A stretch of 63,608 bases of DNA, counting the filler, from Dimorphilus gyrociliatus (lineage: Eukaryota; Animalia; Annelida): NCBI GenBank assembly GCA_904063045.1. It is 4 parts of 4 records of this genome, joined end to end, with 100 filler letters (N's around TTAATTAATTAA, not from the genome) between each part and the next. Parts side by side here need not be neighbours in the genome. Positions count along the whole stretch, not along the records: positions 32,887 to 55,648 come from CAJFCJ010000254.1; 3 more parts are not named here. One strand, written 5' to 3'. The position numbers and the translations under genes are program-made. Below are positions 32,887-51,714 of the stretch, piece by piece. The notes under the pieces were generated by a model. That model did not search any database, was not told where the DNA came from, and saw nothing but the letters and a program-made list of their open reading frames with translations. Positions within the stretch are counted from its first letter, which is position 1; every line of letters begins with the position of its first letter.

Positions 32887-33816
32887 GTTAATTGTCACTG
32901 GCTCTATTTTGAATTTTTCCACAGTATCCTGTTCTGGAAGTGGGAAGAACTTGATGAAGCCCTTCCTTAATAGGAAGAGCTTTTGACCAGTCCATTCATT
33001 GCTATTTGGAGTTCTTTGTTCAGTTTTCTCTAGTTCCAGTAGGAGCTCTCTGTTTCTCTTATTGGCTTCCTCTAATTTATTATTAGCTTCCTGTAATTTA
33101 TTACTAGCTTCCTCCAGCTTACTGGAGCTTGCTTTGATTGTACTTTCTAGCTCTACCACTTTGTTCCTAAGGTCTAGATTATCTTTTCGTAGGTTATTCA
33201 ATGTGGGTCTACTCAGACCCACATAAGAGTATTTATTGTTACAGAGAACTGAGTTCTCATATTGCTCATGAGCTAACTCCTTAGGCAGAGGTGTATTAAA
33301 ATTCTCCAAGAGCTCCAGGGTAACCCCTTGGATACTAACTATTGTTGGTCTGGTACTACAAGGGAACTCATTCGGGTTTGTCCCTCTAATGTCTGGGTTA
33401 CTTTTCTTAAACTTAGCTATTTCTACCCAGTCAGCATTATATAGTAATTGCAACAATGTACTCACTTTCTTGACATGGAAGTGTTCTGTCTCTGGTTGGA
33501 CCATGATAGGAAGGATTCTTATGTTGGTAGTGTTGCAGGTCCTCATATGAAGAGCCAGAGCTCCAACATTGTCTTTGCTTGTTTTTGATTTTTTTAATGA
33601 AAATCCATACATTCTATGTAGTGGAGATATGGTGAAACTAGCCATAGCCCAGTTGCACTTTTTGCAATCAGCAATGAAGAACAAGTGGTCTGAATTACAA
33701 TTGAGGTCTCCCTCAATCTTTTTAGTAATACGGCCATCTCTGGAGCTCCAGGACCCTCCCTGTATTAGGGCTGGGCAAAGTTTGCACTTATTTGTCATGC
33801 ATCTAGAAGCTGGCAT
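32887..33816 (-). CDS. PLE ORF3, partial (cut by contig end)
   Basis: Same as 37870-39075 apart from indels near the contig end. Confidence 0.85.
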
Positions 33817-33944
33817 CTTTAGGAAGTACTTGTTAACACTGTCAAGTGAAGAGGATGACTGAGGTTCTGCACCAGTATATATAGTGGTATAGTTGAGTAC
33901 TGTCAGAGGTGTTGAGTACTAAGTTGTAAGAACTGTTGAAGCTC

Positions 33945-34215
33945 ACTTGAGCTCTTGGAGCTCTATTGAGTTCTTGGAGCTCTACTGAGCTCTTAGAGCT
34001 CTTGGAGCTCTACTGAGATCTTAGAGCTCTTGGAGCTCTACTGAGCTCTTAGAGCTCTTGGAGCTCTACTGAGTTCTTGGAGCTCTACTGAGCTCTTCAA
34101 GGTCTCCTGTGGTATTGGAGCTCAACTGAGCTACTGTAGCTCCTTGGAGCTCTTGGACCTTATTGTGGCTAACTGTAGCTTTTGGAGTTCATTGTAGCTT
34201 GTAGAGCTTGTTGTA
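33945..34215. repeat. GAGCTC palindrome-rich tandem repeats between the RT stop and ORF3
   Basis: GAGCTCTTGGAGCTCTACT / GAGCTCTTA units, repeated at 39204-39474, about 44340-44610 and about 49560-49830. Confidence 0.9.
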
Positions 34216-34229
34216 GCTGCTGAAATTCA

Positions 34230-36506
34230 TTACAGTTCTTGGAGTTCACTTTGGCTTTTCTGGAGTAGAATTTTTTCTATGTGTTTTTCCATCATCTCAT
34301 CAACTTTCTTATTGATAAGCCAGTGTCTGGTAGTAGTTGGGATCCTAAAGGCAGTTATTGACTTATACATTTGGAAGTGAGAACTGTTAGGGGCTAGCTG
34401 GTGGATTGTTCTCTTGACTTTCTCAGCTATTAGTTGGGCTCCATTGTGTTGTGGTATGAGGAGTGGTACCATTTCCTTGGTGGTAAAACCTTCATGTTTA
34501 TTAAGACCATGTGGGAACAGTGTATCCAAATGGTTGATGATTTCAGTTTCTTTTCTCATTAACCAAACTATTACTGAGCTCTCTGTGAGTTCCTTAGGAG
34601 CTACAGCAGCTATGTAGATCTTGAACTTCTTGATATCATGTGTTGCCATATGGTTATATAGTGGTCTATCTATCTTGTTTTTGAAGCCCAAATTATGGGT
34701 ACCCCATCTACACTTGATAGTATCTGTAGTCATACCCACATATGCTAACCCACACATAGAGCATTGTAGGATATAGACACAACCCTTGGTGTTACAGTTA
34801 ATGCTTTGGGTTAAGCTCCAAGAGTTGACCTGGTATAGGTCAAATACCTCATCTCTGGAGTCCAGTCTGAGGCAAGTATCACATCTAGTGTTACAACATT
34901 TATTGACTTTATACCTCAGTGCCTTTTTTTCTTCAGCTCTGGTGTTGAATTTTTTAATGGTGTCCCTCCCCATTCTCCAGGTGTAGCCATTGACTTTATT
35001 GATTCTAATGAGATCTTTGAACTGTGAGATAGCCATTTTGGGATCTTTGCAGTTTCTCATATATCTAGTTAGCTGGCTCATTAGGATACCTCTGAATGTG
35101 TGTGGTGGATGATTGGATTTGGTGTGTAGCAGTATTCTGGAGTCAGTAGCCTTAAAATGGGTTTCCCAGGAAAGAGAGTTCCCTAGTATATGTAGGTCCA
35201 GGTCCAGAAAAGTACTTGATTTAGGGTTCTGGGACCAAGTGAGCTTGATATCTGGATTTCTGTTGTTTAGTCTTGTCTTGAACTCCATGATGTCCCTGTC
35301 TGGTTTAGTGACCAAAATGATATCATCAATGTACCTGCCATAGTACTCAATGTCCTCTGTAAAATCTGTGACCAATTCGTGTTCCCAGGTGTGTAACACT
35401 ATGTTTGCATATGCTGGACTAAATGGAGCTCCCATAGCTGTGCCCTTTATTTGCAGGAACCTGTGGTTCCCAAAGGTGAAATCATTGTTGTTGAGACAAA
35501 TCCAAAGGAGTTCCAAGATTAGTTCATCAGGTCTACCTTCATGGTAGTGGGTTAACATGAACTCTTTAACAGCTTTTATGCCCCATTGAGGGTTAATGCT
35601 TGGGTATAGAGCTTCTACATCTGCTGTGAAGATCCCTCTGTTTTGCCAATTATGTATCATAGATAGTTTGCCAATGCAATGTTGGGTGTTTTTAACATAG
35701 CTAGTGGTACTTTTTGCCATTTTGACCAGATAGTGATCAACAAATTTAGATATTTTATATAGATCAGAGCCTACATAGCTCACCACTGGTCTCCCCTTGG
35801 GGATCCTATATGGTACTCTCCATTGGGAGCTGTGTTTATGAATTTTAGGTAGGAGGTAAAACTTTCTATCTCCTGGGCTATTCTGTGGAGCCATCAGAGT
35901 TGCTGTAGATTTGGTAATAATTTTCATTGTAACCAATTCATTAAGGATTTCATTTAACCGGGTCCATTGGGTAGAGCTTATTTTATTGCTGACCTGTTTG
36001 TAGGTTGTTCTGTCACAGAGCTGTGTCATGGCTTCAAAGACATAGTCCTCTTTGTCCATTAAGACAATCCTTCTTCCTTTATCAGCTGGTTTAATGATAA
36101 TGTTAGGATGATTGTTGAGGAAGTTTTTCATTAGGCCTTGATTTTCAAAACCCTTCTGGGCTCTATTAATTTTTTCAGAGCCCTTTATAATGTTATATAT
36201 CCTGTCTGTGATATGGTTAATTTCTGGAATATGACTAGAGGGCATGTAATTTAACTCCCTCATTAGTTCAGGTAGAGATGGTGCTTGTATGTCAAGAAGT
36301 TTTTTCTTTAGTGGATTATTTCGAAATCTTGGTGTACCATTTTTCTCAATGATCTTTAGCCATTTTAATGTATAATCCAAGATCCCTGTGAAGTGCAAGT
36401 TTATAAATTTGTTTGGGGCCCAAGTCCAGGCAAAGCCTAGACCTTGTGCCATAGTGTTCAGGCAAGAACTCTTGATGTTAGAGTTCCTACATAGGTTAAA
36501 AACCAT
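34230..36506 (-). CDS. PLE reverse transcriptase with C-terminal GIY-YIG endonuclease (Neptune/Naiad-like Cys linker)
   Basis: KPADKG, TADVEALYPSI, GTAMGAPFSPAYAN and RYIDD; CCNTRCDTC linker; VYILQCSMCGLAYVG...R...H...E...GLN; reading frame open upstream to about 36605. Confidence 0.97.
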   Translation of the reverse strand: MVFNLCRNSNIKSSCLNTMAQGLGFAWTWAPNKFINLHFTGILDYTLKWLKIIEKNGTPRFRNNPLKKKLLDIQAPSLPELMRELNYMPSSHIPEINHITDRIYNIIKGSEKINRAQKGFENQGLMKNFLNNHPNIIIKPADKGRRIVLMDKEDYVFEAMTQLCDRTTYKQVSNKISSTQWTRLNEILNELVTMKIITKSTATLMAPQNSPGDRKFYLLPKIHKHSSQWRVPYRIPKGRPVVSYVGSDLYKISKFVDHYLVKMAKSTTSYVKNTQHCIGKLSMIHNWQNRGIFTADVEALYPSINPQWGIKAVKEFMLTHYHEGRPDELILELLWICLNNNDFTFGNHRFLQIKGTAMGAPFSPAYANIVLHTWEHELVTDFTEDIEYYGRYIDDIILVTKPDRDIMEFKTRLNNRNPDIKLTWSQNPKSSTFLDLDLHILGNSLSWETHFKATDSRILLHTKSNHPPHTFRGILMSQLTRYMRNCKDPKMAISQFKDLIRINKVNGYTWRMGRDTIKKFNTRAEEKKALRYKVNKCCNTRCDTCLRLDSRDEVFDLYQVNSWSLTQSINCNTKGCVYILQCSMCGLAYVGMTTDTIKCRWGTHNLGFKNKIDRPLYNHMATHDIKKFKIYIAAVAPKELTESSVIVWLMRKETEIINHLDTLFPHGLNKHEGFTTKEMVPLLIPQHNGAQLIAEKVKRTIHQLAPNSSHFQMYKSITAFRIPTTTRHWLINKKVDEMMEKHIEKILLQKSQSELQEL

Positions 36507-36577
36507 ACTTGGTTCTGTTTTATTGATAAAAACATGTTTAAAAACATTATAATTGTTATGCTGTTGTGCTTGAAGAG

Positions 36578-37360
36578 TTAGGAGTTTCCCTGGTCCATAG
36601 TCTCCTCATCAGCACTCATTTTCTCTGTAATTCCTTTAAATAAGACAGTCATGATTGCCAATTCCTTTCTTAGTTCTGAGATTTCATCCTTAGAGTTCTT
36701 GTAAGGTTCTTTGTGTCTGGTTTTGTCTGCTGGTTTCTTGGATCTCTGTATGGTAGGGAGCTCTTTGAAATTTTCATGGAGCTCTCTATTGAAAGAGTCA
36801 TCTAAGGGAGCTTTTAGATTTTTGGTAACCAAGTATACACTTTCTTTAAGTTGGGCCCAATTAATCTTTTTGCCATATTTTTGTATCGATCTGGTTTTAG
36901 CTACTTCAATAGCTTTCTTAACCTCTGATTGATTGTAATTTTGCTGATCATTTTTTATCTTGTCCCTCATTTTAGAGAGCCTCTCATTGAGCTCCTCCAG
37001 CACCACTCTATTTGTTTCTCTAGCACAAGTATTGGCTATTTCATGTAGTTGGTTGAGTCTTTCCCCAGTAATGGGACCTCCTGTGATTCTAATTGAGTCC
37101 ATCATATCCATGGCCTTTTTGGTCCAAGGGTTATATTCCTTAAGTCTCTCAATCTGGTGAATAGAACTGTAAGTTTTACTCATAGCTCTAGTCAGGGCTT
37201 TTTCCTTGTCACTTAGAGAACCTTTAAAACCATTTGCATCAGGTGCAGTCTGGCTCTTTGTGACTTGTACCCATCTGGGTTTGTCTGGAGCTCTGGAGTA
37301 GGGTGTCTTTCTTCCTGTTTTTTTTGTTCTTCTAGGAGCTTGGTTTTGTTTAGGGTCCAT
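36578..37360 (-). CDS. PLE ORF1, a basic coiled-coil protein (260 aa from MDPKQ)
   Basis: First ATG at 37360; helical heptad-rich segments; lies directly upstream of the RT. Confidence 0.85.
   Translation of the reverse strand: MDPKQNQAPRRTKKTGRKTPYSRAPDKPRWVQVTKSQTAPDANGFKGSLSDKEKALTRAMSKTYSSIHQIERLKEYNPWTKKAMDMMDSIRITGGPITGERLNQLHEIANTCARETNRVVLEELNERLSKMRDKIKNDQQNYNQSEVKKAIEVAKTRSIQKYGKKINWAQLKESVYLVTKNLKAPLDDSFNRELHENFKELPTIQRSKKPADKTRHKEPYKNSKDEISELRKELAIMTVLFKGITEKMSADEETMDQGNS
36584..36590 (-). promoter_or_regulatory. -1 ribosomal frameshift slippery heptamer G GGA AAC
   Basis: XXXYYYZ in the correct ORF1 phase, one codon before the stop; the -1 frame is open into the RT; also at 41843-41849 and 47205-47211. 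Confidence 0.75.
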
Positions 37361-37721
37361 TGCCAAAGTCTGTACTGGGTAGGTTAGGGTTTGGTAAGGG
37401 TTATGGGTTAGGCCACTCACACAACTCTGGTAATGTTTTTGGGAACTGGTTAGCTAGTGTTCCAGTGTAATACCTAACTTTTACTCAATGTTAGGTAGGG
37501 GTTCTCCTTGGTCAGGATTATAGATCTGGGCTCCCAGTCTTAGTCAGGTTTTGGGAACTGGTTAGTTGGTGTTCCAGGGTTCTACCAATTTTCCAATAGG
37601 TAGGAGTTCTCTATGTCTGAGCTCCTTTGTGCTTCAGTGCTCTGTCAAACTCTTAGTCTTATTCAATAACAATTAAATTTTTTCTTTTTCATCAACTTTT
37701 TATTTTAAACTTTAAAACATA

Positions 37722-37766
37722 TTACAACAATATTTCGCCTCTACTTGAGGCTTCATCAGGTTGTAA
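37722..37766 (-). ncRNA. Minimal type I hammerhead ribozyme of the PLE
   Basis: TTACAAC-CTGATGA-A-GCCTC(AAGTA)GAGGC-GAAA-TA-TT-GTTGTAA. Confidence 0.85.
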
Positions 37767-37869
37767 GTTAAACTGAACACAAACATAAGTATTTATACCA
37801 TCACCACAAAAAATTTATATATAAAAAACATGAAAACAAGATGGCTGCCCTTGCACTAGCGCCACCTAA

Positions 37870-39075
37870 CTACATTTTTCTTTGTTTCTTTGAAGGTACT
37901 ACTTCAAATTCATCACCTGATCTTTTGATTAGGAGTCTTTGTTGTATTCCAATATTGCTATTCTCTTTTGGAGTGCTTTCATATTGATACTCACCATCTT
38001 CCATATCATCATAGTTGTCATCATCTTCTTCCTCCTCAGTCTGTTCCTTGGTAGGGACCATTTCTTTGTCTGGAGTTTGTTGAGCTCCTCTGTCTATAGT
38101 TTGTTGAGCTCCTGGTGTAGAGTTGGAGTCAAGATCCTCAAGGTTAATTGTCACTGGCTCTATTTTGAATTTTTCCACAGTATCCTGTTCTGGAAGTGGG
38201 AAGAACTTGATGAAGCCCCTTCCCTTAATAGGAAGAGCTTTTGACCAGTCCCATTCATTGCTATTTGGAGTTCTTTGTTCAGTTTTCTCTAGTTCCAGTA
38301 GGAGCTCTCTGTTTCTCTTATTGGCTTCCTCTAATTTATTATTAGCTTCCTGTAATTTATTACTAGCTTCCTCCAGCTTACTGGAGCTTGCTTTGATTGT
38401 ACTTTCTAGCTCTACCACTTTGTTCCTAAGGTCTAGATTATCTTTTCGTAGGTTATTCAATGTGGGTCTACTCAGACCCACATAAGAGTATTTATTGTTA
38501 CAGAGAACTGAGTTCTCATATTGCTCATGAGCTAACTCCTTAGGCAGAGGTGTATTAAAATTCTCCAAGAGCTCCAGGGTAACCCCTTGGATACTAACTA
38601 TTGTTGGTCTGGTACTACAAGGGAACTCATTCGGGTTTGTCCCTCTAATGTCTGGGTTACTTTTCTTAAACTTAGCTATTTCTACCCAGTCAGCATTATA
38701 TAGTAATTGCAACAATGTACTCACTTTCTTGACATGGAAGTGTTCTGTCTCTGGTTGGACCATGATAGGAAGGATTCTTATGTTGGTAGTGTTGCAGGTC
38801 CTCATATGAAGAGCCAGAGCTCCAACATTGTCTTTGCTTGTTTTTGATTTTTTTAATGAAAATCCATACATTCTATGTAGTGGAGATATGGTGAAACTAG
38901 CCATAGCCCAGTTGCACTTTTTGCAATCAGCAATGAAGAACAAGTGGTCTGAATTACAATTGAGGTCTCCCTCAATCTTTTTAGTAATACGGCCATCTCT
39001 GGAGCTCCAGGACCCTCCCTGTATTAGGGCTGGGCAAAGTTTGCACTTATTTGTCATGCATCTAGAAGCTGGCAT
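37870..39075 (-). CDS. PLE ORF3 (401 aa): degenerate GIY-YIG-like N-terminus, coiled coil, acidic tract and C-terminal NLS-like motif
   Basis: CxxxxCxxC...NC...CxxC spacing mirrors the RT's EN; KLEEASN/KLQEANN/KLEEANK heptads; EEEDDDNYDD; PSKKQRKM. Confidence 0.85.
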   Translation of the reverse strand: MPASRCMTNKCKLCPALIQGGSWSSRDGRITKKIEGDLNCNSDHLFFIADCKKCNWAMASFTISPLHRMYGFSLKKSKTSKDNVGALALHMRTCNTTNIRILPIMVQPETEHFHVKKVSTLLQLLYNADWVEIAKFKKSNPDIRGTNPNEFPCSTRPTIVSIQGVTLELLENFNTPLPKELAHEQYENSVLCNNKYSYVGLSRPTLNNLRKDNLDLRNKVVELESTIKASSSKLEEASNKLQEANNKLEEANKRNRELLLELEKTEQRTPNSNEWDWSKALPIKGRGFIKFFPLPEQDTVEKFKIEPVTINLEDLDSNSTPGAQQTIDRGAQQTPDKEMVPTKEQTEEEEDDDNYDDMEDGEYQYESTPKENSNIGIQQRLLIKRSGDEFEVVPSKKQRKM

Positions 39076-39488
39076 CTTTAGGAAGTACTTGTTAACACTG
39101 TCAAGTGAAGAGGATGACTGAGGTTCTGCACCAGTATATATAGTGGTATAGTTGAGTACTGTCAGAGGTGTTGAGTACTAAGTTGTAAGAACTGTTGAAG
39201 CTCACTTGAGCTCTTGGAGCTCTATTGAGTTCTTGGAGCTCTACTGAGCTCTTAGAGCTCTTGGAGCTCTACTGAGATCTTAGAGCTCTTGGAGCTCTAC
39301 TGAGCTCTTAGAGCTCTTGGAGCTCTACTGAGTTCTTGGAGCTCTACTGAGCTCTTCAAGGTCTCCTGTGGTATTGGAGCTCAACTGAGCTACTGTAGCT
39401 CCTTGGAGCTCTTGGACCTTATTGTGGCTAACTGTAGCTTTTGGAGTTCATTGTAGCTTGTAGAGCTTGTTGTAGCTGCTGAAATTCA

Positions 39489-41765
39489 TTACAGTTCTTG
39501 GAGTTCACTTTGGCTTTTCTGGAGTAGAATTTTTTCTATGTGTTTTTCCATCATCTCATCAACTTTCTTATTGATAAGCCAGTGTCTGGTAGTAGTTGGG
39601 ATCCTAAAGGCAGTTATTGACTTATACATTTGGAAGTGAGAACTGTTAGGGGCTAGCTGGTGGATTGTTCTCTTGACTTTCTCAGCTATTAGTTGGGCTC
39701 CATTGTGTTGTGGTATGAGGAGTGGTACCATTTCCTTGGTGGTAAAACCTTCATGTTTATTAAGACCATGTGGGAACAGTGTATCCAAATGGTTGATGAT
39801 TTCAGTTTCTTTTCTCATTAACCAAACTATTACTGAGCTCTCTGTGAGTTCCTTAGGAGCTACAGCAGCTATGTAGATCTTGAACTTCTTGATATCATGT
39901 GTTGCCATATGGTTATATAGTGGTCTATCTATCTTGTTTTTGAAGCCCAAATTATGGGTACCCCATCTACACTTGATAGTATCTGTAGTCATACCCACAT
40001 ATGCTAACCCACACATAGAGCATTGTAGGATATAGACACAACCCTTGGTGTTACAGTTAATGCTTTGGGTTAAGCTCCAAGAGTTGACCTGGTATAGGTC
40101 AAATACCTCATCTCTGGAGTCCAGTCTGAGGCAAGTATCACATCTAGTGTTACAACATTTATTGACTTTATACCTCAGTGCCTTTTTTTCTTCAGCTCTG
40201 GTGTTGAATTTTTTAATGGTGTCCCTCCCCATTCTCCAGGTGTAGCCATTGACTTTATTGATTCTAATGAGATCTTTGAACTGTGAGATAGCCATTTTGG
40301 GATCTTTGCAGTTTCTCATATATCTAGTTAGCTGGCTCATTAGGATACCTCTGAATGTGTGTGGTGGATGATTGGATTTGGTGTGTAGCAGTATTCTGGA
40401 GTCAGTAGCCTTAAAATGGGTTTCCCAGGAAAGAGAGTTCCCTAGTATATGTAGGTCCAGGTCCAGAAAAGTACTTGATTTAGGGTTCTGGGACCAAGTG
40501 AGCTTGATATCTGGATTTCTGTTGTTTAGTCTTGTCTTGAACTCCATGATGTCCCTGTCTGGTTTAGTGACCAAAATGATATCATCAATGTACCTGCCAT
40601 AGTACTCAATGTCCTCTGTAAAATCTGTGACCAATTCGTGTTCCCAGGTGTGTAACACTATGTTTGCATATGCTGGACTAAATGGAGCTCCCATAGCTGT
40701 GCCCTTTATTTGCAGGAACCTGTGGTTCCCAAAGGTGAAATCATTGTTGTTGAGACAAATCCAAAGGAGTTCCAAGATTAGTTCATCAGGTCTACCTTCA
40801 TGGTAGTGGGTTAACATGAACTCTTTAACAGCTTTTATGCCCCATTGAGGGTTAATGCTTGGGTATAGAGCTTCTACATCTGCTGTGAAGATCCCTCTGT
40901 TTTGCCAATTATGTATCATAGATAGTTTGCCAATGCAATGTTGGGTGTTTTTAACATAGCTAGTGGTACTTTTTGCCATTTTGACCAGATAGTGATCAAC
41001 AAATTTAGATATTTTATATAGATCAGAGCCTACATAGCTCACCACTGGTCTCCCCTTGGGGATCCTATATGGTACTCTCCATTGGGAGCTGTGTTTATGA
41101 ATTTTAGGTAGGAGGTAAAACTTTCTATCTCCTGGGCTATTCTGTGGAGCCATCAGAGTTGCTGTAGATTTGGTAATAATTTTCATTGTAACCAATTCAT
41201 TAAGGATTTCATTTAACCGGGTCCATTGGGTAGAGCTTATTTTATTGCTGACCTGTTTGTAGGTTGTTCTGTCACAGAGCTGTGTCATGGCTTCAAAGAC
41301 ATAGTCCTCTTTGTCCATTAAGACAATCCTTCTTCCTTTATCAGCTGGTTTAATGATAATGTTAGGATGATTGTTGAGGAAGTTTTTCATTAGGCCTTGA
41401 TTTTCAAAACCCTTCTGGGCTCTATTAATTTTTTCAGAGCCCTTTATAATGTTATATATCCTGTCTGTGATATGGTTAATTTCTGGAATATGACTAGAGG
41501 GCATGTAATTTAACTCCCTCATTAGTTCAGGTAGAGATGGTGCTTGTATGTCAAGAAGTTTTTTCTTTAGTGGATTATTTCGAAATCTTGGTGTACCATT
41601 TTTCTCAATGATCTTTAGCCATTTTAATGTATAATCCAAGATCCCTGTGAAGTGCAAGTTTATAAATTTGTTTGGGGCCCAAGTCCAGGCAAAGCCTAGA
41701 CCTTGTGCCATAGTGTTCAGGCAAGAACTCTTGATGTTAGAGTTCCTACATAGGTTAAAAACCAT
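39489..41765 (-). CDS. PLE RT-GIY-YIG, second copy
   Basis: Translation identical to 34230-36506. Confidence 0.97.
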   Translation of the reverse strand: MVFNLCRNSNIKSSCLNTMAQGLGFAWTWAPNKFINLHFTGILDYTLKWLKIIEKNGTPRFRNNPLKKKLLDIQAPSLPELMRELNYMPSSHIPEINHITDRIYNIIKGSEKINRAQKGFENQGLMKNFLNNHPNIIIKPADKGRRIVLMDKEDYVFEAMTQLCDRTTYKQVSNKISSTQWTRLNEILNELVTMKIITKSTATLMAPQNSPGDRKFYLLPKIHKHSSQWRVPYRIPKGRPVVSYVGSDLYKISKFVDHYLVKMAKSTTSYVKNTQHCIGKLSMIHNWQNRGIFTADVEALYPSINPQWGIKAVKEFMLTHYHEGRPDELILELLWICLNNNDFTFGNHRFLQIKGTAMGAPFSPAYANIVLHTWEHELVTDFTEDIEYYGRYIDDIILVTKPDRDIMEFKTRLNNRNPDIKLTWSQNPKSSTFLDLDLHILGNSLSWETHFKATDSRILLHTKSNHPPHTFRGILMSQLTRYMRNCKDPKMAISQFKDLIRINKVNGYTWRMGRDTIKKFNTRAEEKKALRYKVNKCCNTRCDTCLRLDSRDEVFDLYQVNSWSLTQSINCNTKGCVYILQCSMCGLAYVGMTTDTIKCRWGTHNLGFKNKIDRPLYNHMATHDIKKFKIYIAAVAPKELTESSVIVWLMRKETEIINHLDTLFPHGLNKHEGFTTKEMVPLLIPQHNGAQLIAEKVKRTIHQLAPNSSHFQMYKSITAFRIPTTTRHWLINKKVDEMMEKHIEKILLQKSQSELQEL

Positions 41766-41836
41766 ACTTGGTTCTGTTTTATTGATAAAAACATGTTTAA
41801 AAACATTATAATTGTTATGCTGTTGTGCTTGAAGAG

Positions 41837-42033
41837 TTAGGAGTTTCCCTGGTCCATAGTCTCCTCATCAGCACTCATTTTCTCTGTAATTCCTTTAAAT
41901 AAGACAGTCATGATTGCCAATTCCTTTCTTAGTTCTGAGATTTCATCCTTAGAGTTCTTGTAAGGTTCTTTGTGTCTGGTTTTGTCTGCTGGTTTCTTGG
42001 ATCTCTGTATGGTAGGGAGCTCTTTGAAATTTT
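41837..42033 (-). pseudogene. 5'-truncated ORF1 fused to the telomere
   Basis: Matches 36578-36774, then switches to TTAGG(G)n. Confidence 0.9.
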
Positions 42034-42640: not shown

Positions 42641-43307
42641 NNNNNNNNNNNNNNNNNNNNNNNNNNNNNNNNNNNNNNNNNNNNNNNNNNNNNNNNNNNN
42701 NNNNNNNNNNNNNNNNNNNNNNNNNNNNNNNNNNNNNNNNNNNNNNNNNNNNNNNNNNNNNNNNNNNNNNNNNNNNNNNNNNNNNNNNNNNNNNNNNNNN
42801 NNNNNNNNNNNNNNNNNNNNNNNNNNNNNNNNNNNNNNNNNNNNNNNNNNNNNNNNNNNNNNNNNNNNNNNNNNNNNNNNNNNNNNNNNNNNNNNNNNNN
42901 NNNNNNNNNNNNNNNNNNNNNNNNNNNNNNNNNNNNNNNNNNNNNNNNNNNNNNNNNNNNNNNNNNNNNNNNNNNNNNNNNNNNNNNNNNNNNNNNNNNN
43001 NNNNNNNNNNNNNNNNNNNNNNNNNNNNNNNNNNNNNNNNNNNNNNNNNNNNNNNNNNNNNNNNNNNNNNNNNNNNNNNNNNNNNNNNNNNNNNNNNNNN
43101 NNNNNNNNNNNNNNNNNNNNNNNNNNNNNNNNNNNNNNNNNNNNNNNNNNNNNNNNNNNNNNNNNNNNNNNNNNNNNNNNNNNNNNNNNNNNNNNNNNNN
43201 NNNNNNNNNNNNNNNNNNNNNNNNNNNNNNNNNNNNNNNNNNNNNNNNNNNNNNNNNNNNNNNNNNNNNNNNNNNNNNNNNNNNNNNNNNNNNNNNNNNN
43301 NNNNNNG
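42641..43307. other. Scaffold gap
   Basis: N-run without the linker. Confidence 0.95.
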
Positions 43308-46044
43308 ATATCAAGCTCACTTGGTCCCAGAACCCTAAATCAAGTACTTTTCTGGACCTGGACCTACATATACTAGGGAACTCTTTTCCTGGGAAACCAT
43401 TTTAAGGCTACTGACTCCAGAATACTGCTACACACCAAATCCAATCATCCACCACACACATTCAGAGGTATCCTAATGAGCCAGCTAACTAGATATATGA
43501 GAAACTGCAAAGATCCCAAATGGCTATCTCACAGTTCAAAGATCTCATTAGAATCAATAAAGTCAATGGCTACACCTGGAGAATGGGGAGGGACACCATT
43601 AAAAAATTCAACACCAGAGCTGAAGAAAAAAGGCACTGAGGTATAAAGTCAATAAATGTTGTAACACTAGATGTGATACTTGCCTCAGACTGGACTCCAG
43701 AGATGAGGTATTTGACCTATACCAGGTCAACTCTTGGAGCTTAACCCAAAGCATTAACTGTAACACCAAGGGTTGTGTCTATATCCTACAATGCTCTATG
43801 TGTGGGTTAGCATATGTGGGTATGACTACAGATACTATCAAGTGTAGATGGGGTACCCATAATTTGGGCTTCAAAAACAAGATAGATAGACCACTATATA
43901 ACCATATGGCAACACATGATATCAAGAAGTTCAAGATCTACATAGCTGCTGTAGCTCCTAAGGAACTCACAGAGAGCTCAGTAATAGTTTGGTTAATGAG
44001 AAAAGAAACTGAAATCATCAACCATTTGGATACACTGTTCCCACATGGTCTTAATAAACATGAAGGTTTTACCACCAAGGAAATGGTACCACTCCTCATA
44101 CCACAACACAATGGAGCCCAACTAATAGCTGAGAAAGTCAAGAGAACAATCCACCAGCTAGCCCCTAACAGTTCTCACTTCCAAATGTATAAGTCAATAA
44201 CTGCCTTTAGGATCCCAACTACTACCAGACACTGGCTTATCAATAAGAAAGTTGATGAGATGATGGAAAAACACATAGAAAAAATTCTACTCCAGAAAAG
44301 CCAAAGTGAACTCCAAGAACTGTAATGAATTTCAGCAGCTACAACAAGCTCTACAAGCTACAATGAACTCCAAAAGCTACAGTTAGCCACAATAAGGTCC
44401 AAGAGCTCCAAGGAGCTACAGTAGCTCAGTTGAGCTCCAATACCACAGGAGACCTTGAAGAGCTCAGTAGAGCTCCAAGAACTCAGTAGAGCTCCAAGAG
44501 CTCTAAGAGCTCAGTAGAGCTCCAAGAGCTCTAAGATCTCAGTAGAGCTCCAAGAGCTCTAAGAGCTCAGTAGAGCTCCAAGAACTCAATAGAGCTCCAA
44601 GAGCTCAAGTGAGCTTCAACAGTTCTTACAACTTAGTACTCAACACCTCTGACAGTACTCAACTATACCACTATATATACTGGTGCAGAACCTCAGTCAT
44701 CCTCTTCACTTGACAGTGTTAACAAGTACTTCCTAAAGATGCCAGCTTCTAGATGCATGACAAATAAGTGCAAACTTTGCCCAGCCCTAATACAGGGAGG
44801 GTCCTGGAGCTCCAGAGATGGCCGTATTACTAAAAAGATTGAGGGAGACCTCAATTGTAATTCAGACCACTTGTTCTTCATTGCTGATTGCAAAAAGTGC
44901 AACTGGGCTATGGCTAGTTTCACCATATCTCCACTACATAGAATGTATGGATTTTCATTAAAAAAATCAAAAACAAGCAAAGACAATGTTGGAGCTCTGG
45001 CTCTTCATATGAGGACCTGCAACACTACCAACATAAGAATCCTTCCTATCATGGTCCAACCAGAGACAGAACACTTCCATGTCAAGAAAGTGAGTACATT
45101 GTTGCAATTACTATATAATGCTGACTGGGTAGAAATAGCTAAGTTTAAGAAAAGTAACCCAGACATTAGAGGGACAAACCCGAATGAGTTCCCTTGTAGT
45201 ACCAGACCAACAATAGTTAGTATCCAAGGGGTTACCCTGGAGCTCTTGGAGAATTTTAATACACCTCTGGCCTAAGGAGTTAGCTCATGAGCAATATGAG
45301 AACTCAGTTCTCTGTAACAATAAATACTCTTATGTGGGTTGAGTAGACCACATTGGAATAACCTACCGAAAAGATAATCTAGACCTTAGGAACAAAGTGG
45401 TAGAGCTAGAAAGTACAATCAAAGCAAGCTCCAGTAAGCTGGAGGAAGCTAGTAATAAATTACAGGAAGCTAATAATAAATTAGAGGAAGCCAATAAGAG
45501 AAACAGAGAGCTCCTACTGGAACTAGAGAAACTGAACAAAGAACTCCAAATAGCAATGAATGGGACTGGTCAAAAGCTCTTCCTATTAAGGGAAGGGGCT
45601 TCATCAGTTCTTCCCACTTCCAGAACAGGATACTGTGGAAAAATTCAAAATAGAGCCAGTGACAATTAACCTTGAGGATCTTGATCCCAACCTACACCAG
45701 GAGCTCAACAAACTATAGACAGAGGAGCTCAACAAACTCCAGACAAAGAAATGGTCCCTACCAAGGAACAGACTGAGGAGGAAGAAGATGATGACACTAT
45801 GATGATATGGAAGATGGTGAGTATCAATATGAAAGACTCCAAAAGAGAATAGCAATATTGGAATCAACAAAGACTCCTAATCAAAAGATCAGGTGATGAA
45901 TTTGAAGTAGTACCTTCAAAGAAACAAAGAAAATGTAGTTAGGGTGGCGCTAGTGCAAGGGCAGCCATCTTGTTTTCCATGTTTTTTATATATAAATTTT
46001 TTGTGGTGATGGTATAAATACTTATGTTTGTGTTCAGTTTTAAC

Positions 46045-46089
46045 TTACAACCTGATGAAGCCTCAAGTAGAGGCGAAATATTGTTGTAA
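46045..46089 (+). ncRNA. PLE hammerhead ribozyme copy
   Basis: Same motif as 37722-37766. Confidence 0.85.
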
Positions 46090-49000
46090 TATGTTTTAAA
46101 GTTTAAAAAAAAAGTTGATGAAAAAGAAAAAATTTAATTGTTATTGAATAAGACTAAGAGTTTGACAGAGACTGAAGCACAAAGGAGCTCAGACATAGAG
46201 AACTCCTACCTATTGGAAATTGGTAGAACCCTGGAACACCAACTAACCAGTTCCCAAAACCTGACTAAGACTGGGAGCCCAGATCTTATAATCCTGACCA
46301 AGGAGAACCCTACCTAACATTGAGTAAAAGTTAGGTATTACACTGGAACACTAGCTAACCAGTTCCAAAAACATTACCAGAGTTGTGTGAGTGGCCTAAC
46401 CCATAACCCTTACCAAACCTAACCTACCCAGTACAGACTTTGCAATGGACCCTAAACAAAACCAAGCTCCTAGAAGAACAAAAAAAACAGGAAGAAAGAC
46501 ACCCTAGCTCCAGAGCTCCAGACAAACCCAGATGGGTACAAGTCACAAAGAGCCAGACTGGCACCTGATGCAAATGGTTTTAAAGGTTCTCTAAGTGACA
46601 AGGAAAAAGCCCTGACTAGAGTATGAGTAAAACTTCAGTTCTATTCACCAGATTGAGAGACTTAAGGAATATAACCTTGGACCAAAAGGCCATGGATATG
46701 ATGGACTCAATTAGAATCACAGGAGGTCCCATTACTGGGGAAGACTCAACCAACTACATGAATAGCCAATACTTGTGCTAGAGAAACAAATAGAGTGGTG
46801 CTGGAGGAGCTCAATGAGAGGCTCTCTAAAATGAGGGACAAGATAAAAATGATCAGCAAAATTACAATCAATCAGAGGTTAAGAAAGCTATTGAAGTAGC
46901 TAAAACCAGATCGATACAAAATATGGCAAAAGATTAATTGGGCCCACTTAAAGAAGTGTATACTTGGTTACCAAAATCTAAAAGCTCCCTTAGATGACTC
47001 TTTCAATAGAGAGCTCCATGAAAATTTCAAAGAGCTCCCTACCATACAGAGATCCAAGAAACCAGCAGACAAAACCAGACACAAAGAACCTTACAAGAAC
47101 TCTAAGGATGAAATCTCAGAACTAAGAAAGGAATTGGCAATCATGACTGTCTTATTTAAAGGAATTACAGAGAAAATGAGTGCTGATGAGGAGACTATGG
47201 ACCAGGGAAACTCCTAACTCTTCAAGCACAACAGCATAACAATTATAATGTTTTAAACATGTTTTTATCAATAAAACAGAACCAAGTATGGTTTTTAACC
47301 TATGTAGGAACTCTAACATCAAGAGTTCTTGCCTGAACACTATGGCACAAGGTCTAGGCTTTGCCTGGACTTGGGCCCCAAACAAATTTATAAACTTGCA
47401 CTTCACAGGGATCTTGGATTATACATTAAAATGGCTAAAGATCATTGAGAAAATGGTACACCAAATTTCGAAATAATCCACTAAGAAAAACTTCTTGACA
47501 TACAAGCACCATCTCTACCTGAACTAATGAGGGAGTTAAATTACATGCCCTCTAGTCATATTCCAGAAATTAACCATATCACAGACAGGATATATAACAT
47601 TATAAAGGGCTCTGAAAAAATTAATAGAGCCCAGAAGGGTTTTGAAAATCAAGGCCTAATGAAAAACTTCCTCAACAATCATCCTAACATTATCATTAAA
47701 CCAGCTGATAAGGAAGAAGGATTGTCTTAATGGACAAGAGGACTATGTCTTTGAAGCCATGACACAGCTCTGTGACAGAACAACCTACAAACAGGTCAGC
47801 AATAAAATAAGCTCTACCCAATGGACCCGGTTAAATGAAATCCTTAATGAATTGGTTACAATGAAAATTATTACCAAATCTACAGCAACTCTGATGGCTC
47901 CACAGAATAGCCCAGGAGATAGAAAGTTTTACCTCCTACCTAAAATTCATAAACACAGCTCCCAATGGAGAGTACCATATAGGATCCCCAAGGGGAGACC
48001 AGTGGTGAGCTATGTAGGCTCTGATCTATATAAAATATCTAAATTTGTTGATCACTATCTGGTCAAAATGGCAAAAAGTACCACTAGCTATGTTAAAAAC
48101 ACCCAACATTGCATTGGCAAACTATCTATGATACATAATTGGCAAAACAGAGGGATCTTCACAGCAGATGTAGAAGCTCTATACCCAAGCATTAACCCTC
48201 AATGGGGCATAAAAGCTGTTAAAGAGTTCATGTTAACCCACTACCATGAAGGTAGACCTGATGAACTAATCTTGGAACTCCTTTGGATTTGTCTCAACAA
48301 CAATGATTTCACCTTTGGGAACCACAGGTTCCTGCAAATAAAGGGCACAGCTATGGGAGCTCCATTTAGTCCAGCATATGCAAACATAGTGTTACACACC
48401 TGGGAACACGAATTGGTCACAGATTTTACAGAGGACATTGAGTACTATGGCAGGTACATTGATGATATCATTTTGGTCACTAAACCAGACAGGGACATCA
48501 TGGAGTTCAAGACAAGACTAAACAACAGAAATCCAGATATCAAGCTCACTTGGTCCCAGAACCCTAAATCAAGTACTTTTCTGGACCTGGACCTACATAT
48601 ACTAGGGAACTCTCTTTCCTGGGAAACCCATTTTAAGGCTACTGACTCCAGAATACTGCTACACACCAAATCCAATCATCCACCACACACATTCAGAGGT
48701 ATCCTAATGAGCCAGCTAACTAGATATATGAAACTGCAAAGATCCCAAAATGGCTATCTCACAGTTCAAAGATCTCATTAGAATCAATAAAGTCAATGGC
48801 TACACCTGGAGAATGGGAGGGACACCATTAAAAAATTCAACACCAGAGCTGAAGAAAAAAGGCACTGAGGTATAAAGTCAATAAATGTTGTAACACTAGA
48901 TGTATACTTGCCTCAGACTGGACTCCAGAGATGAGGTATTGACCTATACCAGGTCAACTCTTGGAGCTTAACCCAAAGCATTAACTGTAACACCAAGGGT

Positions 49001-51271
49001 TGTGTCTATATCCTACAATGCTCTATGTGTGGGTTAGCATATGTGGGTATGACTACAGATACTATCAAGTGTAGATGGGGTACCCATAATTTGGGCTTCA
49101 AAAACAAGATAGATAGACCACTATATAACCATATGGCAACACATGATATCAAGAAGTTCAAGATCTACATAGCTGCTGTAGCTCCTAAGGAACTCACAGA
49201 GAGCTCAGTAATAGTTTGGTTAATGAGAAAAGAAACTGAAATCATCAACCATTTGGATACACTGTTCCCACATGGTCTTAATAAACATGAAGGTTTTACC
49301 ACCAAGGAAATGGTACCACTCCTCATACCACAACACAATGGAGCCCAACTAATAGCTGAGAAAGTCAAGAGAACAATCCACCAGCTAGCCCCTAACAGTT
49401 CTCACTTCCAAATGTATAAGTCAATAACTGCCTTTAGGATCCCAACTACTACCAGACACTGCTTATCAATAAGAAAGTTGATGAGATGATGGAAAAACAC
49501 ATAGAAAAAATTCTACTCCAGAAAAGCCAAAGTGAACTCCAAGAACTGTAATGAATTTCAGCAGCTACAACAAGCTCTACAAGCTACAATGAACTCCAAA
49601 AGCTACAGTTAGCCACAATAAGGTCCAAGAGCTCCAAGGAGCTACAGTAGCTCAGTTGAGCTCCAATACCACAGGAGACCTTGAAGAGCTCAGTAGAGCT
49701 CCAAGAACTCAGTAGAGCTCCAAGAGCTCTAAGAGCTCAGTAGAGCTCCAAGAGCTCTAAGATCTCAGTAGAGCTCCAAGAGCTCTAAGAGCTCAGTAGA
49801 GCTCCAAGAACTCAATAGAGCTCCAAGAGCTCAAGTGAGCTTCAACAGTTCTTACAACTTAGTACTCAACACCTCTGACAGTACTCAACTATACCACTAT
49901 ATATACTGGTGCAGAACCTCAGTCATCCTCTTCACTTGACAGTGTTAACAAGTACTTCCTAAAGATGCCAGCTTCTAGATGCATGACAAATAAGTGCAAA
50001 CTTTGCCCAGCCCTAATACAGGGAGGGTCCTGGAGCTCCAGAGATGGCCGTATTACTAAAAAGATTGAGGAGACCTCAATTGTAATTCAGACCACTTGTT
50101 CTTCATTGCTGATTGCAAAAAGTGCAACTGGGCTATGGCTAGTTTCACCATATCTCCACTACATAGAATGTATGGATTTTCATTAAAAAAATCAAAAACA
50201 AGCAAAGACAATGTTGGAGCTCTGGCTCTTCATATGAGGACCTGCAACACTACCAACATAAGAATCCTTCCTATCATGGTCCAACCAGAGACAGAACACT
50301 TCCATGTCAAGAAAGTGAGTACATTGTTGCAATTACTATATAATGCTGACTGGGTAGAAATAGCTAAGTTTAAGAAAAGTAACCCAGACATTAGAGGGAC
50401 AAACCCGAATGAGTTCCCTTGTAGTACCAGACCAACAATAGTTAGTATCCAAGGGTTACCCTGGAGCTCTTGGAGAATTTTAATACACCTCTGCCTAAGG
50501 AGTTAGCTCATGAGCAATATGAGAACTCAGTTCTCTGTAACAATAAATACTCTTATGTGGGTCTGAGTAGACCCACATTGAATAACCTACGAAAAGATAA
50601 TCTAGACCTTAGGAACAAAGTGGTAGAGCTAGAAAGTACAATCAAAGCAAGCTCCAGTAAGCTGGAGGAAGCTAGTAATAAATTACAGGAAGCTAATAAT
50701 AAATTAGAGGAAGCCAATAAGAGAAACAGAGAGCTCCTACTGGAACTAGAGAAAACTGAACAAAGAACTCCAAATAGCAATGAATGGGACTGGTCAAAAG
50801 CTCTTCCTATTAAGGGAAGGGGCTTCATCAAGTTCTTCCCACTTCCAGAACAGGATACTGTGGAAAAATTCAAAATAGAGCCAGTGACAATTAACCTTGA
50901 GGATCTTGACTCCAACTCTACACCAGGAGCTCAACAAACTATAGACAGAGGAGCTCAACAAACTCCAGACAAAGAAATGGTCCCTACCAAGGAACAGACT
51001 GAGGAGGAAGAAGATGATGACAACTATGATGATATGGAAGATGGTGAGTATCAATATGAAAGCACTCCAAAAGAGAATAGCAATATTGGAATACAACAAA
51101 GACTCCTAATCAAAAGATCAGGTGATGAATTTGAAGTAGTACCTTCAAAGAAACAAAGAAAAATGTAGTTAGGTGGCGCTAGTGCAAGGGCAGCCATCTT
51201 GTTTTCATGTTTTTTATATATAAATTTTTTGTGGTGATGGTATAAATACTTATGTTTGTGTTCAGTTTAAC

Positions 51272-51316
51272 TTACAACCTGATGAAGCCTCAAGTAGAGG
51301 CGAAATATTGTTGTAA
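51272..51316 (+). ncRNA. PLE hammerhead ribozyme copy
   Basis: Same motif as 37722-37766. Confidence 0.85.
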
Positions 51317-51645
51317 TATGTTTTAAAGTTAAAATAAAAAGTTGATGAAAAAGAAAAAATTTAATTGTTATTGAATAAGACTAAGAGTTTGACAGAGCAC
51401 TGAAGCACCAAGGAGCTCAGACATAGAGAACTCCTACCTATTGGAAAATTGGTAGAACCCTGGAACACCAACTAACCAGTTCCCAAAACCTGACTAAGAC
51501 TGGGAGCCCAGATCTATAATCCTGACCAAGGAGAACCCCTACCTAACATTGAGTAAAAGTTAGGTATTACACTGGAACACTAGCTAACCAGTTCCCAAAA
51601 ACATTACCAGAGTTGTGTGAGTGGCCTAACCCATAACCCTTACCA

Positions 51646-51714
51646 AACCCTAACCCTAACCCTAACCCTAACCTAACCCTAACCCTAACCCTAACCCTAA
51701 CCCTAACCCTAACC
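51646..51714 (-). repeat. About 11 telomeric repeats at the proximal junction of the PLE array
   Basis: (CCCTAA)n on the + strand, between the element's 3' end and unique DNA. Confidence 0.95.

What the first reader, a model, noticed from the sequence alone, without database searches (positions are those of the whole stretch)
32887..51714. Endonuclease-bearing, three-ORF Penelope-like element forming telomere-attached tandem arrays
Seen: 5,259-bp head-to-tail units with identical RT ORFs. The distal end is 5'-truncated and capped by (TTAGGG)n; the proximal end joins unique DNA through about 11 telomeric repeats. Polarity is that expected if cDNA were primed from the G-rich telomeric 3' end. 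Known: telomere-restricted PLEs (Athena, Coprina, bdelloid terminons) lack an RT-fused endonuclease and use coiled-coil ORF1s, whereas EN+ PLEs are usually single-ORF and dispersed. This element combines an intact RT-GIY-YIG with terminon-like architecture (coiled-coil ORF1, extra ORF3, ribozyme, telomeric tail). Inference: an undescribed telomeric retroelement that may co-maintain chromosome ends alongside telomerase, or an evolutionary intermediate between EN+ and EN- PLEs.
Basis: partly seen in the sequence, partly recalled or inferred. Interest (0 to 1): 0.95.

Follow-up and report, generated by a model that had tools for sequence, protein, structure and literature searches.

The report
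Telomere-targeting, endonuclease-bearing three-ORF Penelope-like retroelement
In the tiny annelid Dimorphilus gyrociliatus, a telomerase-related retrotransposon family that keeps its own endonuclease is found, wherever its 3' end could be read, attached to telomere repeats, which blurs the textbook split between endonuclease-free telomeric relatives and endonuclease-bearing dispersed ones.

Summary
The piece holds two arrays of one 5.26-kb Penelope-like element (PLE) in opposite orientation. They are separated by about 105 TTAGGG repeats plus the N gap, which is not continuous. Each arm alone obeys the polarity rule: the 3' end faces C-strand repeats and then flank, and a 5'-truncated copy is capped by G-strand repeats.

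Each unit encodes ORF1 (a helical protein), an intact RT-GIY-YIG ORF with a Neptune-type cysteine linker, and ORF3. ORF3 is an inactivated endonuclease paralogue followed by a coiled coil. The 3' UTR carries a minimal PLE-type hammerhead that Rfam missed; five families show covariation for it. Every unit ends in a templated 31-nt degenerate CCCTAA tract.

Other scaffolds of the same genome show nested, telomere-separated additions of related families, including a 65-nt stub. Relatives with 38-43% RT identity from other samples share ORF1, the hammerhead and the tract, and one of them also has ORF3.

Best reading: an undescribed endonuclease-bearing PLE clade that reverse-transcribes onto telomeric G-strand 3' ends. 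A role in telomere maintenance and the "evolutionary intermediate" status remain untested. I rate it a new variant of a known kind.

The parts
37382..42033 (-). Left-arm distal unit, 5'-truncated by about 600 nt and joined directly to the G-strand telomere tract
   Evidence: Self-BLAST: 37382-42033 matches 51655-47021 at 99.6%. Junction read.
32887..37381 (-). Left-arm second unit. It has a full-length 5' start (TACCCAGTAC...) at 37381 and is cut by the edge of the piece.
   Evidence: 5,259-bp period, 99.9% identity. Junction sequence.
36578..37360 (-). ORF1 (260 aa from the ATG): a disordered basic N-terminus followed by a conserved helical bundle
   Evidence: Homologous to the ORF1s of L002, L003 and L004. 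AF2 pLDDT 78-91 over residues 51-200. 100% match to DgyrCDS14471.
34230..36506 (-). ORF2: reverse transcriptase fused to an intact C-terminal GIY-YIG endonuclease with a CX4CxxC linker and the CCHH motif. An identical second copy lies at 39489..41765.
   Evidence: Pfam RVT_1 1.3e-10 and GIY-YIG 3.2e-06. Motif alignment. 604 PLE-type homologues.
33936..34259 (.). GAGCTC-rich 19/28-bp tandem repeats between ORF2 and ORF3. Also at 39195-39518, 44337-44619 and 49563-49845.
   Evidence: TRF. The deletion in the delta-ORF3 variant starts here.
37870..39075 (-). ORF3 (401 aa): an N-terminal paralogue of the linker + GIY-YIG domain that keeps the zinc-binding Cys/His but has lost the catalytic residues, then a long helix (residues 203-268) and an acidic tail
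   Evidence: BLASTP to the EN regions of RT ORFs. Alignment. A profile search hits more than 400 PLE EN domains. AF2.
37722..37766 (-). Minimal type-I hammerhead ribozyme motif in the 3' UTR, with predicted cleavage between 37729 and 37728. Copies at 46045-46089 (+) and 51272-51316 (+).
   Evidence: Motif scan, <=1 of 2000 shuffles. 8 of 9 pairs covary across 5 families, 0 of 500 shuffles. Matches the published PLE min-HHR description.
37382..37412 (-). Templated 31-nt degenerate C-strand telomere-like tract that ends every unit. Also at 46394-46424 (+) and 51625-51655 (+).
   Evidence: The same sequence occurs at internal unit junctions and at the flank junction.
42035..42640 (+). (TTAGGG)n cap of about 105 units, ending at the contig end next to the gap
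   Evidence: TRF, sequence, unit count.
42641..43306 (.). Scaffolding gap (N). The two sides are not continuous and have opposite element polarity.
   Evidence: The assembly was scaffolded with SSPACE-LongRead.
43307..46424 (+). Right-arm partial unit: the 3' 3.1 kb, with frameshifted ORFs
46425..51655 (+). Right-arm full-length unit. All three ORFs are interrupted by single-base indels.
51656..51714 (+). C-strand telomeric repeats between the element's 3' end and the flank
51715..55648 (.). AT-rich flank. It is not unique DNA but a mosaic of dispersed repeats that also lie next to PLE copies on other scaffolds. It begins with CCAGTAC-like bases that resemble an element 5' start.

Best explanation
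This is an active or very recently active family ('A') of a distinct clade of endonuclease-bearing Penelope-like retrotransposons in Dimorphilus gyrociliatus. The clade integrates specifically at (TTAGGG)n.

Proposed mechanism:
1. The element RNA carries a built-in degenerate CCCUAA tract at the end of the unit.
2. That tract base-pairs with a G-strand 3'-OH. The 3'-OH most likely comes from a nick made in telomeric duplex by the element's own intact GIY-YIG endonuclease, whose cysteine linker is thought to direct related PLEs to microsatellites. A natural overhang could also serve.
3. The RT extends the G strand, so the sense strand always runs 5'->3' towards the centromere on the C strand.
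4. Synthesis either reaches the CCAGTAC 5' start or aborts, leaving 5'-truncated copies.
5. Telomerase then re-caps the new end.
6. Uniform head-to-tail junctions arise from template jumping or read-through multimeric RNA, as in other PLEs, and possibly from recombination.
7. ORF1 (basic tail plus helical bundle) and ORF3 (dead-endonuclease zinc module plus coiled coil) are probably RNP or DNA-binding accessory proteins.
8. The dimer-type hammerhead processes array transcripts.

Shown: the anatomy, the polarity, the independent telomere-flanked junctions, the intact EN motifs, hammerhead covariation, and conservation across the clade.
Inferred: which 3'-OH is used, how arrays form, and what ORF1 and ORF3 do.
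For: 1. Every 3' end I could read abuts telomeric repeats in the predicted polarity:
- window 51655;
- L005 2766, family A added onto family B, and L005 ~370, family B onto flank;
- L008 13520, plus a 65-nt 3'-end stub with telomeric repeats on both sides;
- family C in L007, and a C-like end in L009.

2. 5'-truncated copies are followed directly by G-strand repeats: window 42033 and family B in L005.

3. The degenerate C-strand tract is templated. It is identical at all internal A-A junctions. Comparable tracts occur in families B and C and in the relatives L002 and L003 from other samples.

4. The EN catalytic motifs and the CX4CxxC linker are intact in A, L002, L003, L004 and C.

5. Together with P0005 these form a group with SH-aLRT 100, separate from 69 other PLE hits.

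6. The elements sit at or near scaffold ends in two further scaffolds.

7. The hammerhead is conserved, with compensatory changes.

8. Published background: EN- PLEs use reverse-complement telomeric repeats to attach to G overhangs, and the Neptune/Naiad linker is proposed to target microsatellites.
Against: - No experiment or read-level data back this up. The assembly in these regions is noisy: there are indels and scaffold palindromes around N gaps.
- Only a handful of loci could be reached, and only through annotated proteins, so this is not a genome-wide census.
- One interstitial 1.67-kb 5' fragment lacks any telomeric repeat (L001).
- Family C sits inside an 86-kb scaffold, flanked only by short telomere-like tracts.
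- The hammerhead lies 110-590 nt upstream of the tract, not adjacent to it as in terminons, so how the RNA 3' end is formed is unexplained.
- Nothing distinguishes an EN nick from priming at a natural end.
- A delta-ORF3 variant also forms arrays, so ORF3 is not needed in cis, or arrays grow by recombination.
Confidence: 0.6

Rival explanations
1. Athena/Coprina-like, endonuclease-independent end addition. The C-rich RNA tract anneals to the natural G overhang or to a deprotected end. The fused EN is irrelevant to telomeric addition: it is either a relic or serves only rare interstitial moves.
For: The polarity, the capped 5' truncations, the nested additions separated by telomerase repeats and the 65-nt stub are exactly what is described for EN- PLEs. 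Arrays lie at scaffold ends.
Against: The EN catalytic residues and linker are conserved across families that are only 35-43% identical in the RT, which argues for selection on EN function. Family C is flanked by short telomere-like tracts inside a scaffold, which fits insertion into internal repeats better than end addition.
Confidence: 0.27
2. An ordinary dispersed EN+ PLE that landed in subtelomeric DNA and was amplified there by unequal recombination or break-induced replication, with no sequence targeting.
For: The units are nearly identical and the internal junctions are uniform. PLEs generally form tandem and inverted structures. A delta-ORF3 deletion variant is also arrayed.
Against: At least seven independent 3' junctions from three or four families all abut telomeric repeats with the same polarity. 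The telomere-like tract is part of the element and is conserved in relatives from other samples. The truncation points differ between junctions.
Confidence: 0.06
3. Assembly artefact. The arrays, the inversions and the telomere junctions are chimeras produced by noisy PacBio reads, haplotig merging and SSPACE-LongRead scaffolding.
For: The two arms are inverted around N gaps, both here and in CAJFCJ010000107.1, where the same A/B junction appears in both orientations. One arm is rich in indels. The pipeline is described.
Against: This explains the inverted joins but not the within-contig junctions. Those recur with different flanks, different truncation points and different families on at least four scaffolds, and comparable tracts occur in independently assembled short-read contigs of relatives.
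Confidence: 0.05

Closest known systems
Athena and Coprina EN-deficient PLEs and bdelloid Terminons
   Same: - PLE-type RT.
- Reverse-complement telomeric repeats at the 3' end of the unit.
- A hammerhead motif.
- An upstream ORF1 and extra ORFs. Stand-alone GIY-YIG-like ORFs are reported in Terminons (abstract of the Terminon paper recalled from memory).
- 5'-truncated copies capped by telomeric repeats.
- Chains of units separated by short telomere tracts.
- The same polarity.
   Different: - The RT here is fused to an intact GIY-YIG endonuclease with CCHH and a CX4CxxC linker.
- The hammerhead is the metazoan dimer-type minimal form and lies 110-590 nt upstream of the tract, not adjacent to it.
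- Units are compact (5.3 kb).
- The host is an annelid.
Neptune-type (and Naiad) EN+ PLEs that insert into microsatellites
   Same: A C-terminal GIY-YIG with CCHH, the cysteine linker upstream of the EN, tandem (pseudo-LTR) organisation, a min-HHR, and a biased choice of simple-repeat targets.
   Different: - Described members have a single ORF and are dispersed, typically in (TA)n.
- Here there are three ORFs, the target is the telomeric repeat, and the element carries its own copy of the target's complement.
- Placement relative to named Neptune references was not tested. In my tree the clade is separate from all 69 other hits, including other linker-bearing ones.
TRAS/SART (Bombyx) telomere-repeat-specific non-LTR retrotransposons
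   Same: Endonuclease-bearing retrotransposons that insert specifically into telomeric repeats alongside telomerase-type repeats (listed; mechanism from established literature, recalled from memory).
   Different: A different class of RT and of endonuclease (APE-type) and no hammerhead. They are not homologous beyond the RT fold.
HeT-A/TART/TAHRE of Drosophila and MoTeR of Magnaporthe
   Same: Head-to-tail terminal arrays with fixed polarity. There may also be reliance on the upstream unit for transcription; this last point is an analogy only.
   Different: Those replace or destabilise telomerase repeats and are non-LTR elements. Here a telomerase-type cap of about 600 bp persists.

Membership tests
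Penelope-like elements, canonical C-terminal EN+ type | PLE-type reverse transcriptase | tested here: met
   Pfam RVT_1. 604 homologues carry the PLE-associated Pfam set PF00078/PF28514/PF26215/PF01541.
Penelope-like elements, canonical C-terminal EN+ type | C-terminal GIY-YIG endonuclease with the two Cys between GIY and YIG and the two His (CCHH) | tested here: met
   Pfam GIY-YIG at residues 574-659. GIY, CxxC, YVG, R, H, H..H, E and N are all present.
Penelope-like elements, canonical C-terminal EN+ type | Minimal hammerhead ribozyme in the terminal repeat or 3' region | tested here: met
   A motif with a bulged base 5' of helix II and a palindromic helix III. Covariation in 8 of 9 pairs. 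Rfam models did not detect it.
Penelope-like elements, canonical C-terminal EN+ type | Single ORF | tested here: not met
   There are three conserved ORFs: ORF1, RT-EN and ORF3.
Penelope-like elements, canonical C-terminal EN+ type | Tandem or inverted (pseudo-LTR) copy organisation | tested here: met
   Head-to-tail units. The inverted arms occur only across N gaps, so that part is unverified.
Neptune clade | CX2-5CxxC zinc-finger-like linker between RT and EN | tested here: met
   CX4CxxC is present in A, L002, L003 and L004 and absent from the fish Poseidon-like hits.
Neptune clade | RT groups with named Neptune references | not testable with these tools
   No named reference sequences were obtainable. 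Among 75 database hits the clade stands apart with SH-aLRT 100.
Athena / Coprina / Terminons (EN- telomeric PLEs) | No endonuclease fused to the RT | tested here: not met
   An intact fused GIY-YIG is present.
Athena / Coprina / Terminons (EN- telomeric PLEs) | Short reverse-complement telomeric repeats at the 3' end of the unit | tested here: met
   A 31-nt degenerate CCCTAA tract ends every unit. Analogous tracts occur in B, C, L002 and L003.
Athena / Coprina / Terminons (EN- telomeric PLEs) | Hammerhead immediately adjacent to the telomeric tract | tested here: not met
   The hammerhead lies about 320 nt (A), about 590 nt (B), about 270 nt (C) and about 110 nt (L003) upstream of the tract.
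Athena / Coprina / Terminons (EN- telomeric PLEs) | Terminal location, fixed polarity, and 5'-truncated copies capped by telomeric repeats | tested here: met
   This holds for the loci reachable here, not for a whole-genome census.
Athena / Coprina / Terminons (EN- telomeric PLEs) | RT groups with Athena or Coprina references | not testable with these tools
   No reference sequences were available.

The most novel reading that the evidence does not exclude
This clade is a living link between dispersed EN+ PLEs and telomere-bound EN- PLEs. Its members are endonuclease-bearing elements that have specialised on telomeric repeats, using a telomerase-like internal template tract. They have duplicated and inactivated their endonuclease into a telomere-DNA-binding accessory protein (ORF3). 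Solitary ORF3-like genes sitting next to host genes suggest that copies of it have been domesticated by the host. The arrays would form a regular, regulated subterminal layer of annelid chromosome ends that works together with telomerase.
Probability: 0.2. Interest if true: 0.88.

Novelty: new variant of a known kind. Interest (0 to 1): 0.72.

Why it matters
PLE reverse transcriptases are the closest retroelement relatives of telomerase. The field currently divides PLEs into two kinds: endonuclease-free elements confined to chromosome ends, and endonuclease-bearing, single-ORF elements that insert throughout the genome.

A clade that combines an intact fused endonuclease with the full set of terminon-like telomere-attachment hallmarks would show that telomere specialisation does not require loss of the endonuclease. 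This clade also has two extra conserved ORFs, one of them a dead copy of the endonuclease.

It would also provide a compact 5.3-kb, apparently young model for testing how a PLE RNA pairs with the G strand. And it offers a concrete scenario for transitions between the EN+ and EN- lifestyles near the root of telomerase evolution.

There is a practical point as well. These arrays cause palindromic mis-scaffolding at the chromosome ends of the published D. gyrociliatus assembly.

Tried and rejected
- Rfam scans of the whole piece (E<=1), of one unit (E<=10) and of three related loci (E<=10) gave no hammerhead. They returned only chance snoRNA hits and a weak mir-1756 hit caused by the palindromic GAGCTC repeats. 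The ribozyme was found only with a hand-written descriptor.
- A CUGAUGAG...GAAAC string at the end of ORF1 (36612, 41871) has no helices and was rejected as a ribozyme.
- An exact-sequence look-up of the RT ORF found nothing on record.
- The AF2 model of ORF3 was poor (pLDDT 46) and Foldseek against the PDB gave nothing significant. A GIY-YIG-family NMR entry appeared only at E=3.8, so the fold is not demonstrated; the homology rests on sequence.
- The ORF1 model was decent (pLDDT 70) but matched only generic helical bundles. Pfam gave nothing for ORF1, and only sub-threshold coiled-coil-type hits for ORF3.
- tblastn of all element proteins against the flank 51715-55648 found no coding remnants.
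- I considered whether the two arms are one locus or two. They differ by only 2 substitutions, so this cannot be decided.
- Gladyshev and Arkhipova 2007 was not held in the library.
- A phylogeny against named Penelope, Neptune, Nematis, Athena, Coprina and Hydra references could not be built, because no tool returned those sequences.
- Solitary ORF3-like genes (L010-L013) had no adjacent RT or telomeric tract.
Full report
**Layout of the piece.**
ORF listing, TRF and self-comparison show that 32887-55648 is not one array.
- The left arm (32887-42033) carries the element on the minus strand with a 5,259-bp period and 99.9% identity between units.
- The right arm (43307-51655) carries the same element on the plus strand.
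- The arms are about 99% identical, and the differences are almost all single-base indels: 59 gaps against 2 substitutions in 7.6 kb.
- As a result the left arm has intact ORFs, while every ORF in the right arm is frameshifted. I read this as uneven polishing of long-read sequence, not as decay.

**The gap (tested first, as asked).**
- The left flank of the N run 42641-43306 is a 606-bp G-strand telomere tract, made of 75 TTAGGG and 29 TTAGG units.
- The right flank is the middle of the RT ORF on the opposite strand.
- The two sides are therefore neither continuous nor in frame. The 'ORF' 42607..43320 is an artefact.
- The host assembly (see below) was scaffolded with SSPACE-LongRead after HaploMerger2.
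- The simplest reading is that a short terminal contig ending at a true chromosome end was joined, probably in the wrong orientation, to the contig that carries the proximal part of an array.
- Whether both arms belong to the same chromosome end cannot be decided from the sequence.

**Anatomy of one unit (sense strand; left-arm coordinates).**
- The unit starts at 37381 (TACCCAGTAC...). ORF1 follows 21 nt later, at 37360..36578 (260 aa).
- After 71 nt comes ORF2, at 36506..34230 (758 aa). It has Pfam RVT_1 and GIY-YIG hits.
- In ORF2 the GIY, CxxC, YVG, Arg, His, H..H, Glu and Asn positions are all intact, and a CX4CxxC linker lies upstream of the EN.
- Next come GAGCTC-rich 19/28-bp tandem repeats.
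- ORF3 follows (39075..37870 in the upstream unit; 401 aa).
- A 490-nt 3' UTR comes last. The unit ends in a 31-nt degenerate C-strand telomere-like tract at 37412..37382.
- The tract is the same sequence at internal unit junctions in both arms, at the flank junction and at all junctions of another array. It is therefore templated by the element, not added by telomerase.

**Ribozyme.**
- Rfam found no hammerhead at E<=10.
- A descriptor search found one sense-strand motif per unit at 37766..37722. It consists of a 7-bp helix I, the CUGAUGA core, a bulged A, a 5-bp helix II, GAAA, and a palindromic AUAU in place of helix III.
- At most 1 of 2000 shuffles of a whole unit gives such a hit.
- The same architecture occurs in family B, in L003 and, with the U3-A8 core covariation, in family C and L004.
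- On a five-sequence alignment, 8 of 9 helix pairs show compensatory changes. No shuffle out of 500 reaches the observed values, and the values collapse when the partners are slid.
- The features match the published description of metazoan PLE min-HHRs: a bulged base 5' of helix II, a palindromic or absent helix III that implies action as a dimer, and the U3-A8 variant.

**ORF1 and ORF3.**
- ORF1 has a disordered basic N-terminus and a confidently predicted helical bundle. Its conserved core is shared with the upstream ORFs of L002, L003, L004 and family D. Neither Pfam nor Foldseek assigns it to a family.
- The first ~110 residues of ORF3 are homologous to the linker + GIY-YIG region of PLE RT-EN proteins. 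A profile of three ORF3s hits more than 400 such EN domains.
- ORF3 keeps the CX4CxxC, the CxxC and the H..H/C positions but has replaced both tyrosines, the Arg, the His, the Glu and the Asn. It is most likely a catalytically dead, zinc-binding nucleic-acid-binding module.
- That module is followed by a helix of about 65 residues (pLDDT 74-84) and an acidic tail.

**Host and other loci.**
- The closest named proteins are from Dimorphilus gyrociliatus, and scaffolds of GCA_904063045.1 carry the same element at 97-100% identity.
- CAJFCJ010000107.1 reads: flank, about 15 TTAGGG, a 5'-truncated antisense element of a related family B (with an ORF3 homologue), about 5 TTAGGG, then antisense family A. 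After an N gap come three sense A units, about 4 CCCTAA, and B with the same truncation junction. This is nested terminal addition. It is also a second palindromic scaffold around a gap.
- In CAJFCJ010000041.1 an array of at least 3.3 units of a 4.1-kb delta-ORF3 variant runs to the end of the scaffold. Proximally it ends in about 19 CCCTAA, then a 65-nt stub of the element's 3' end, then about 5 CCCTAA, then flank.
- CAJFCJ010000045.1 has a family D (58% identity) within 3.6 kb of a scaffold end.
- CAJFCJ010000067.1 has a family C copy (RT 39% identical, frameshifted, no ORF1 or ORF3 seen). Short telomere-like tracts bound it on both sides, and it starts with CCAGTAC as A does.
- The only copy without telomeric repeats is a 1.67-kb 5' fragment in CAJFCJ010000046.1.
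- The genome paper mentions neither PLEs nor telomeres.

**Relatives elsewhere.**
- L002 (a Logan contig; RT 43% identical) has the same ORF1 / RT-EN / ORF3 order and begins with a degenerate CCCTAA-like tract.
- L003 (RT 38%) has ORF1, RT-EN, the hammerhead and a degenerate tract between the hammerhead and ORF1.
- L004 (RT 36%) has ORF1, RT-EN and the hammerhead.
- In an RT-EN tree of 75 hits, A, L002, L003, P0005, L004 and C form a group with SH-aLRT 100, separate from all others. All of them carry the linker and the EN.

**Mechanism.**
- The polarity is constant. The truncation points differ between copies. Telomerase-type repeats lie between successive additions, and there is the 65-nt stub. 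Together these show repeated reverse transcription primed on telomeric G-strand 3' ends that are paired with the element's own C-rich tract.
- This is the mode described for EN- PLEs.
- The EN is conserved across deeply diverged members, and its linker is the one proposed to steer Neptune and Naiad elements to microsatellites. I therefore favour EN nicking of telomeric duplex as the usual source of the 3'-OH (confidence about 0.5-0.6). EN-independent priming at natural ends is the main rival.
- Uniform internal junctions suggest template jumps or multimeric templates, or recombination, rather than separate additions.
- The 600-bp TTAGGG cap argues that telomerase still does the capping. A maintenance role for the element is untested.

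**Comparison and novelty.**
- The element works like Athena/Coprina/Terminons but fails their defining lack of an EN and the hammerhead-next-to-tract arrangement.
- It has the Neptune-type EN and linker but fails the single-ORF, dispersed pattern.
- Functionally it parallels TRAS/SART.
- Literature searches, including a 2023 list of telomeric retrotransposons, found no EN+ telomeric PLE. The library is incomplete and Repbase could not be consulted.
- I rate it a new variant of a known kind.

Noticed in passing
window 42641-43306; L005 6555-6607 (CAJFCJ010000107.1): In both scaffolds the element arrays flip orientation exactly at an N gap. In CAJFCJ010000107.1 the same unique A/B truncation junction appears in both orientations. 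This looks like palindromic mis-scaffolding or duplicated haplotigs at chromosome ends of the published assembly.
   Followed up: partly
L008 522-12799 (CAJFCJ010000041.1, scaffold end): A 4.1-kb deletion variant of family A lacks ORF3 residues 1-335, with the breakpoint in the GAGCTC tandem repeats. It forms its own array of at least 3 units and carries real substitutions relative to the window copies.
   Followed up: partly
L013 10001-10846 (CAJFCJ010000016.1); L010 4985-6097, L011, L012 (Logan SRR233722xx): Solitary ORF3-like genes (281 and 370 aa) occur without an adjacent RT, ORF1 or telomeric tract. In L010 the gene lies beside ordinary host genes, and the same gene is seen in several samples. 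They may be domesticated copies or the source of ORF3.
   Followed up: partly
window 51713-51730: Right after the telomeric repeats the flank begins with CCAGTAC...TTTGG. This resembles the conserved 5' start of families A and C and hints at a degraded further element. No coding remnant was found.
   Followed up: partly
window 52031-54013: The supposedly unique flank is a mosaic of dispersed repeats, including 42-bp tandem repeats at 52056-52588. At 75-96% identity the same repeats lie next to PLE copies in L001 and L007. This fits a subtelomere-type repeat island.
   Followed up: partly
window 33936-34259 and equivalents: GAGCTC-rich 19/28-bp tandem repeats lie between ORF2 and ORF3. They overlap the last codons of ORF2, and their palindromic nature produces the weak Rfam mir-1756 hit. 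Their function is unknown; an internal promoter or a translation signal for ORF3 is possible.
   Followed up: no
L007 15061-15100; L004 394-434: The hammerheads of family C and L004, which are sister groups in the RT tree, use the U3-A8 core covariation instead of C3-G8.
   Followed up: yes
L001 9136-10801 (CAJFCJ010000046.1): An interstitial 1.67-kb fragment of family A (ORF1 plus the 5' part of the RT; 97% identical) has no 3' end and no telomeric repeat. It is embedded among the same dispersed repeats as the window flank, so it is a relic or a rearrangement rather than a normal insertion.
   Followed up: partly
window 42035-42640: About 28% of the telomeric units read TTAGG instead of TTAGGG. 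This is probably homopolymer drop-out in long reads, but genuine variant repeats cannot be excluded.
   Followed up: no
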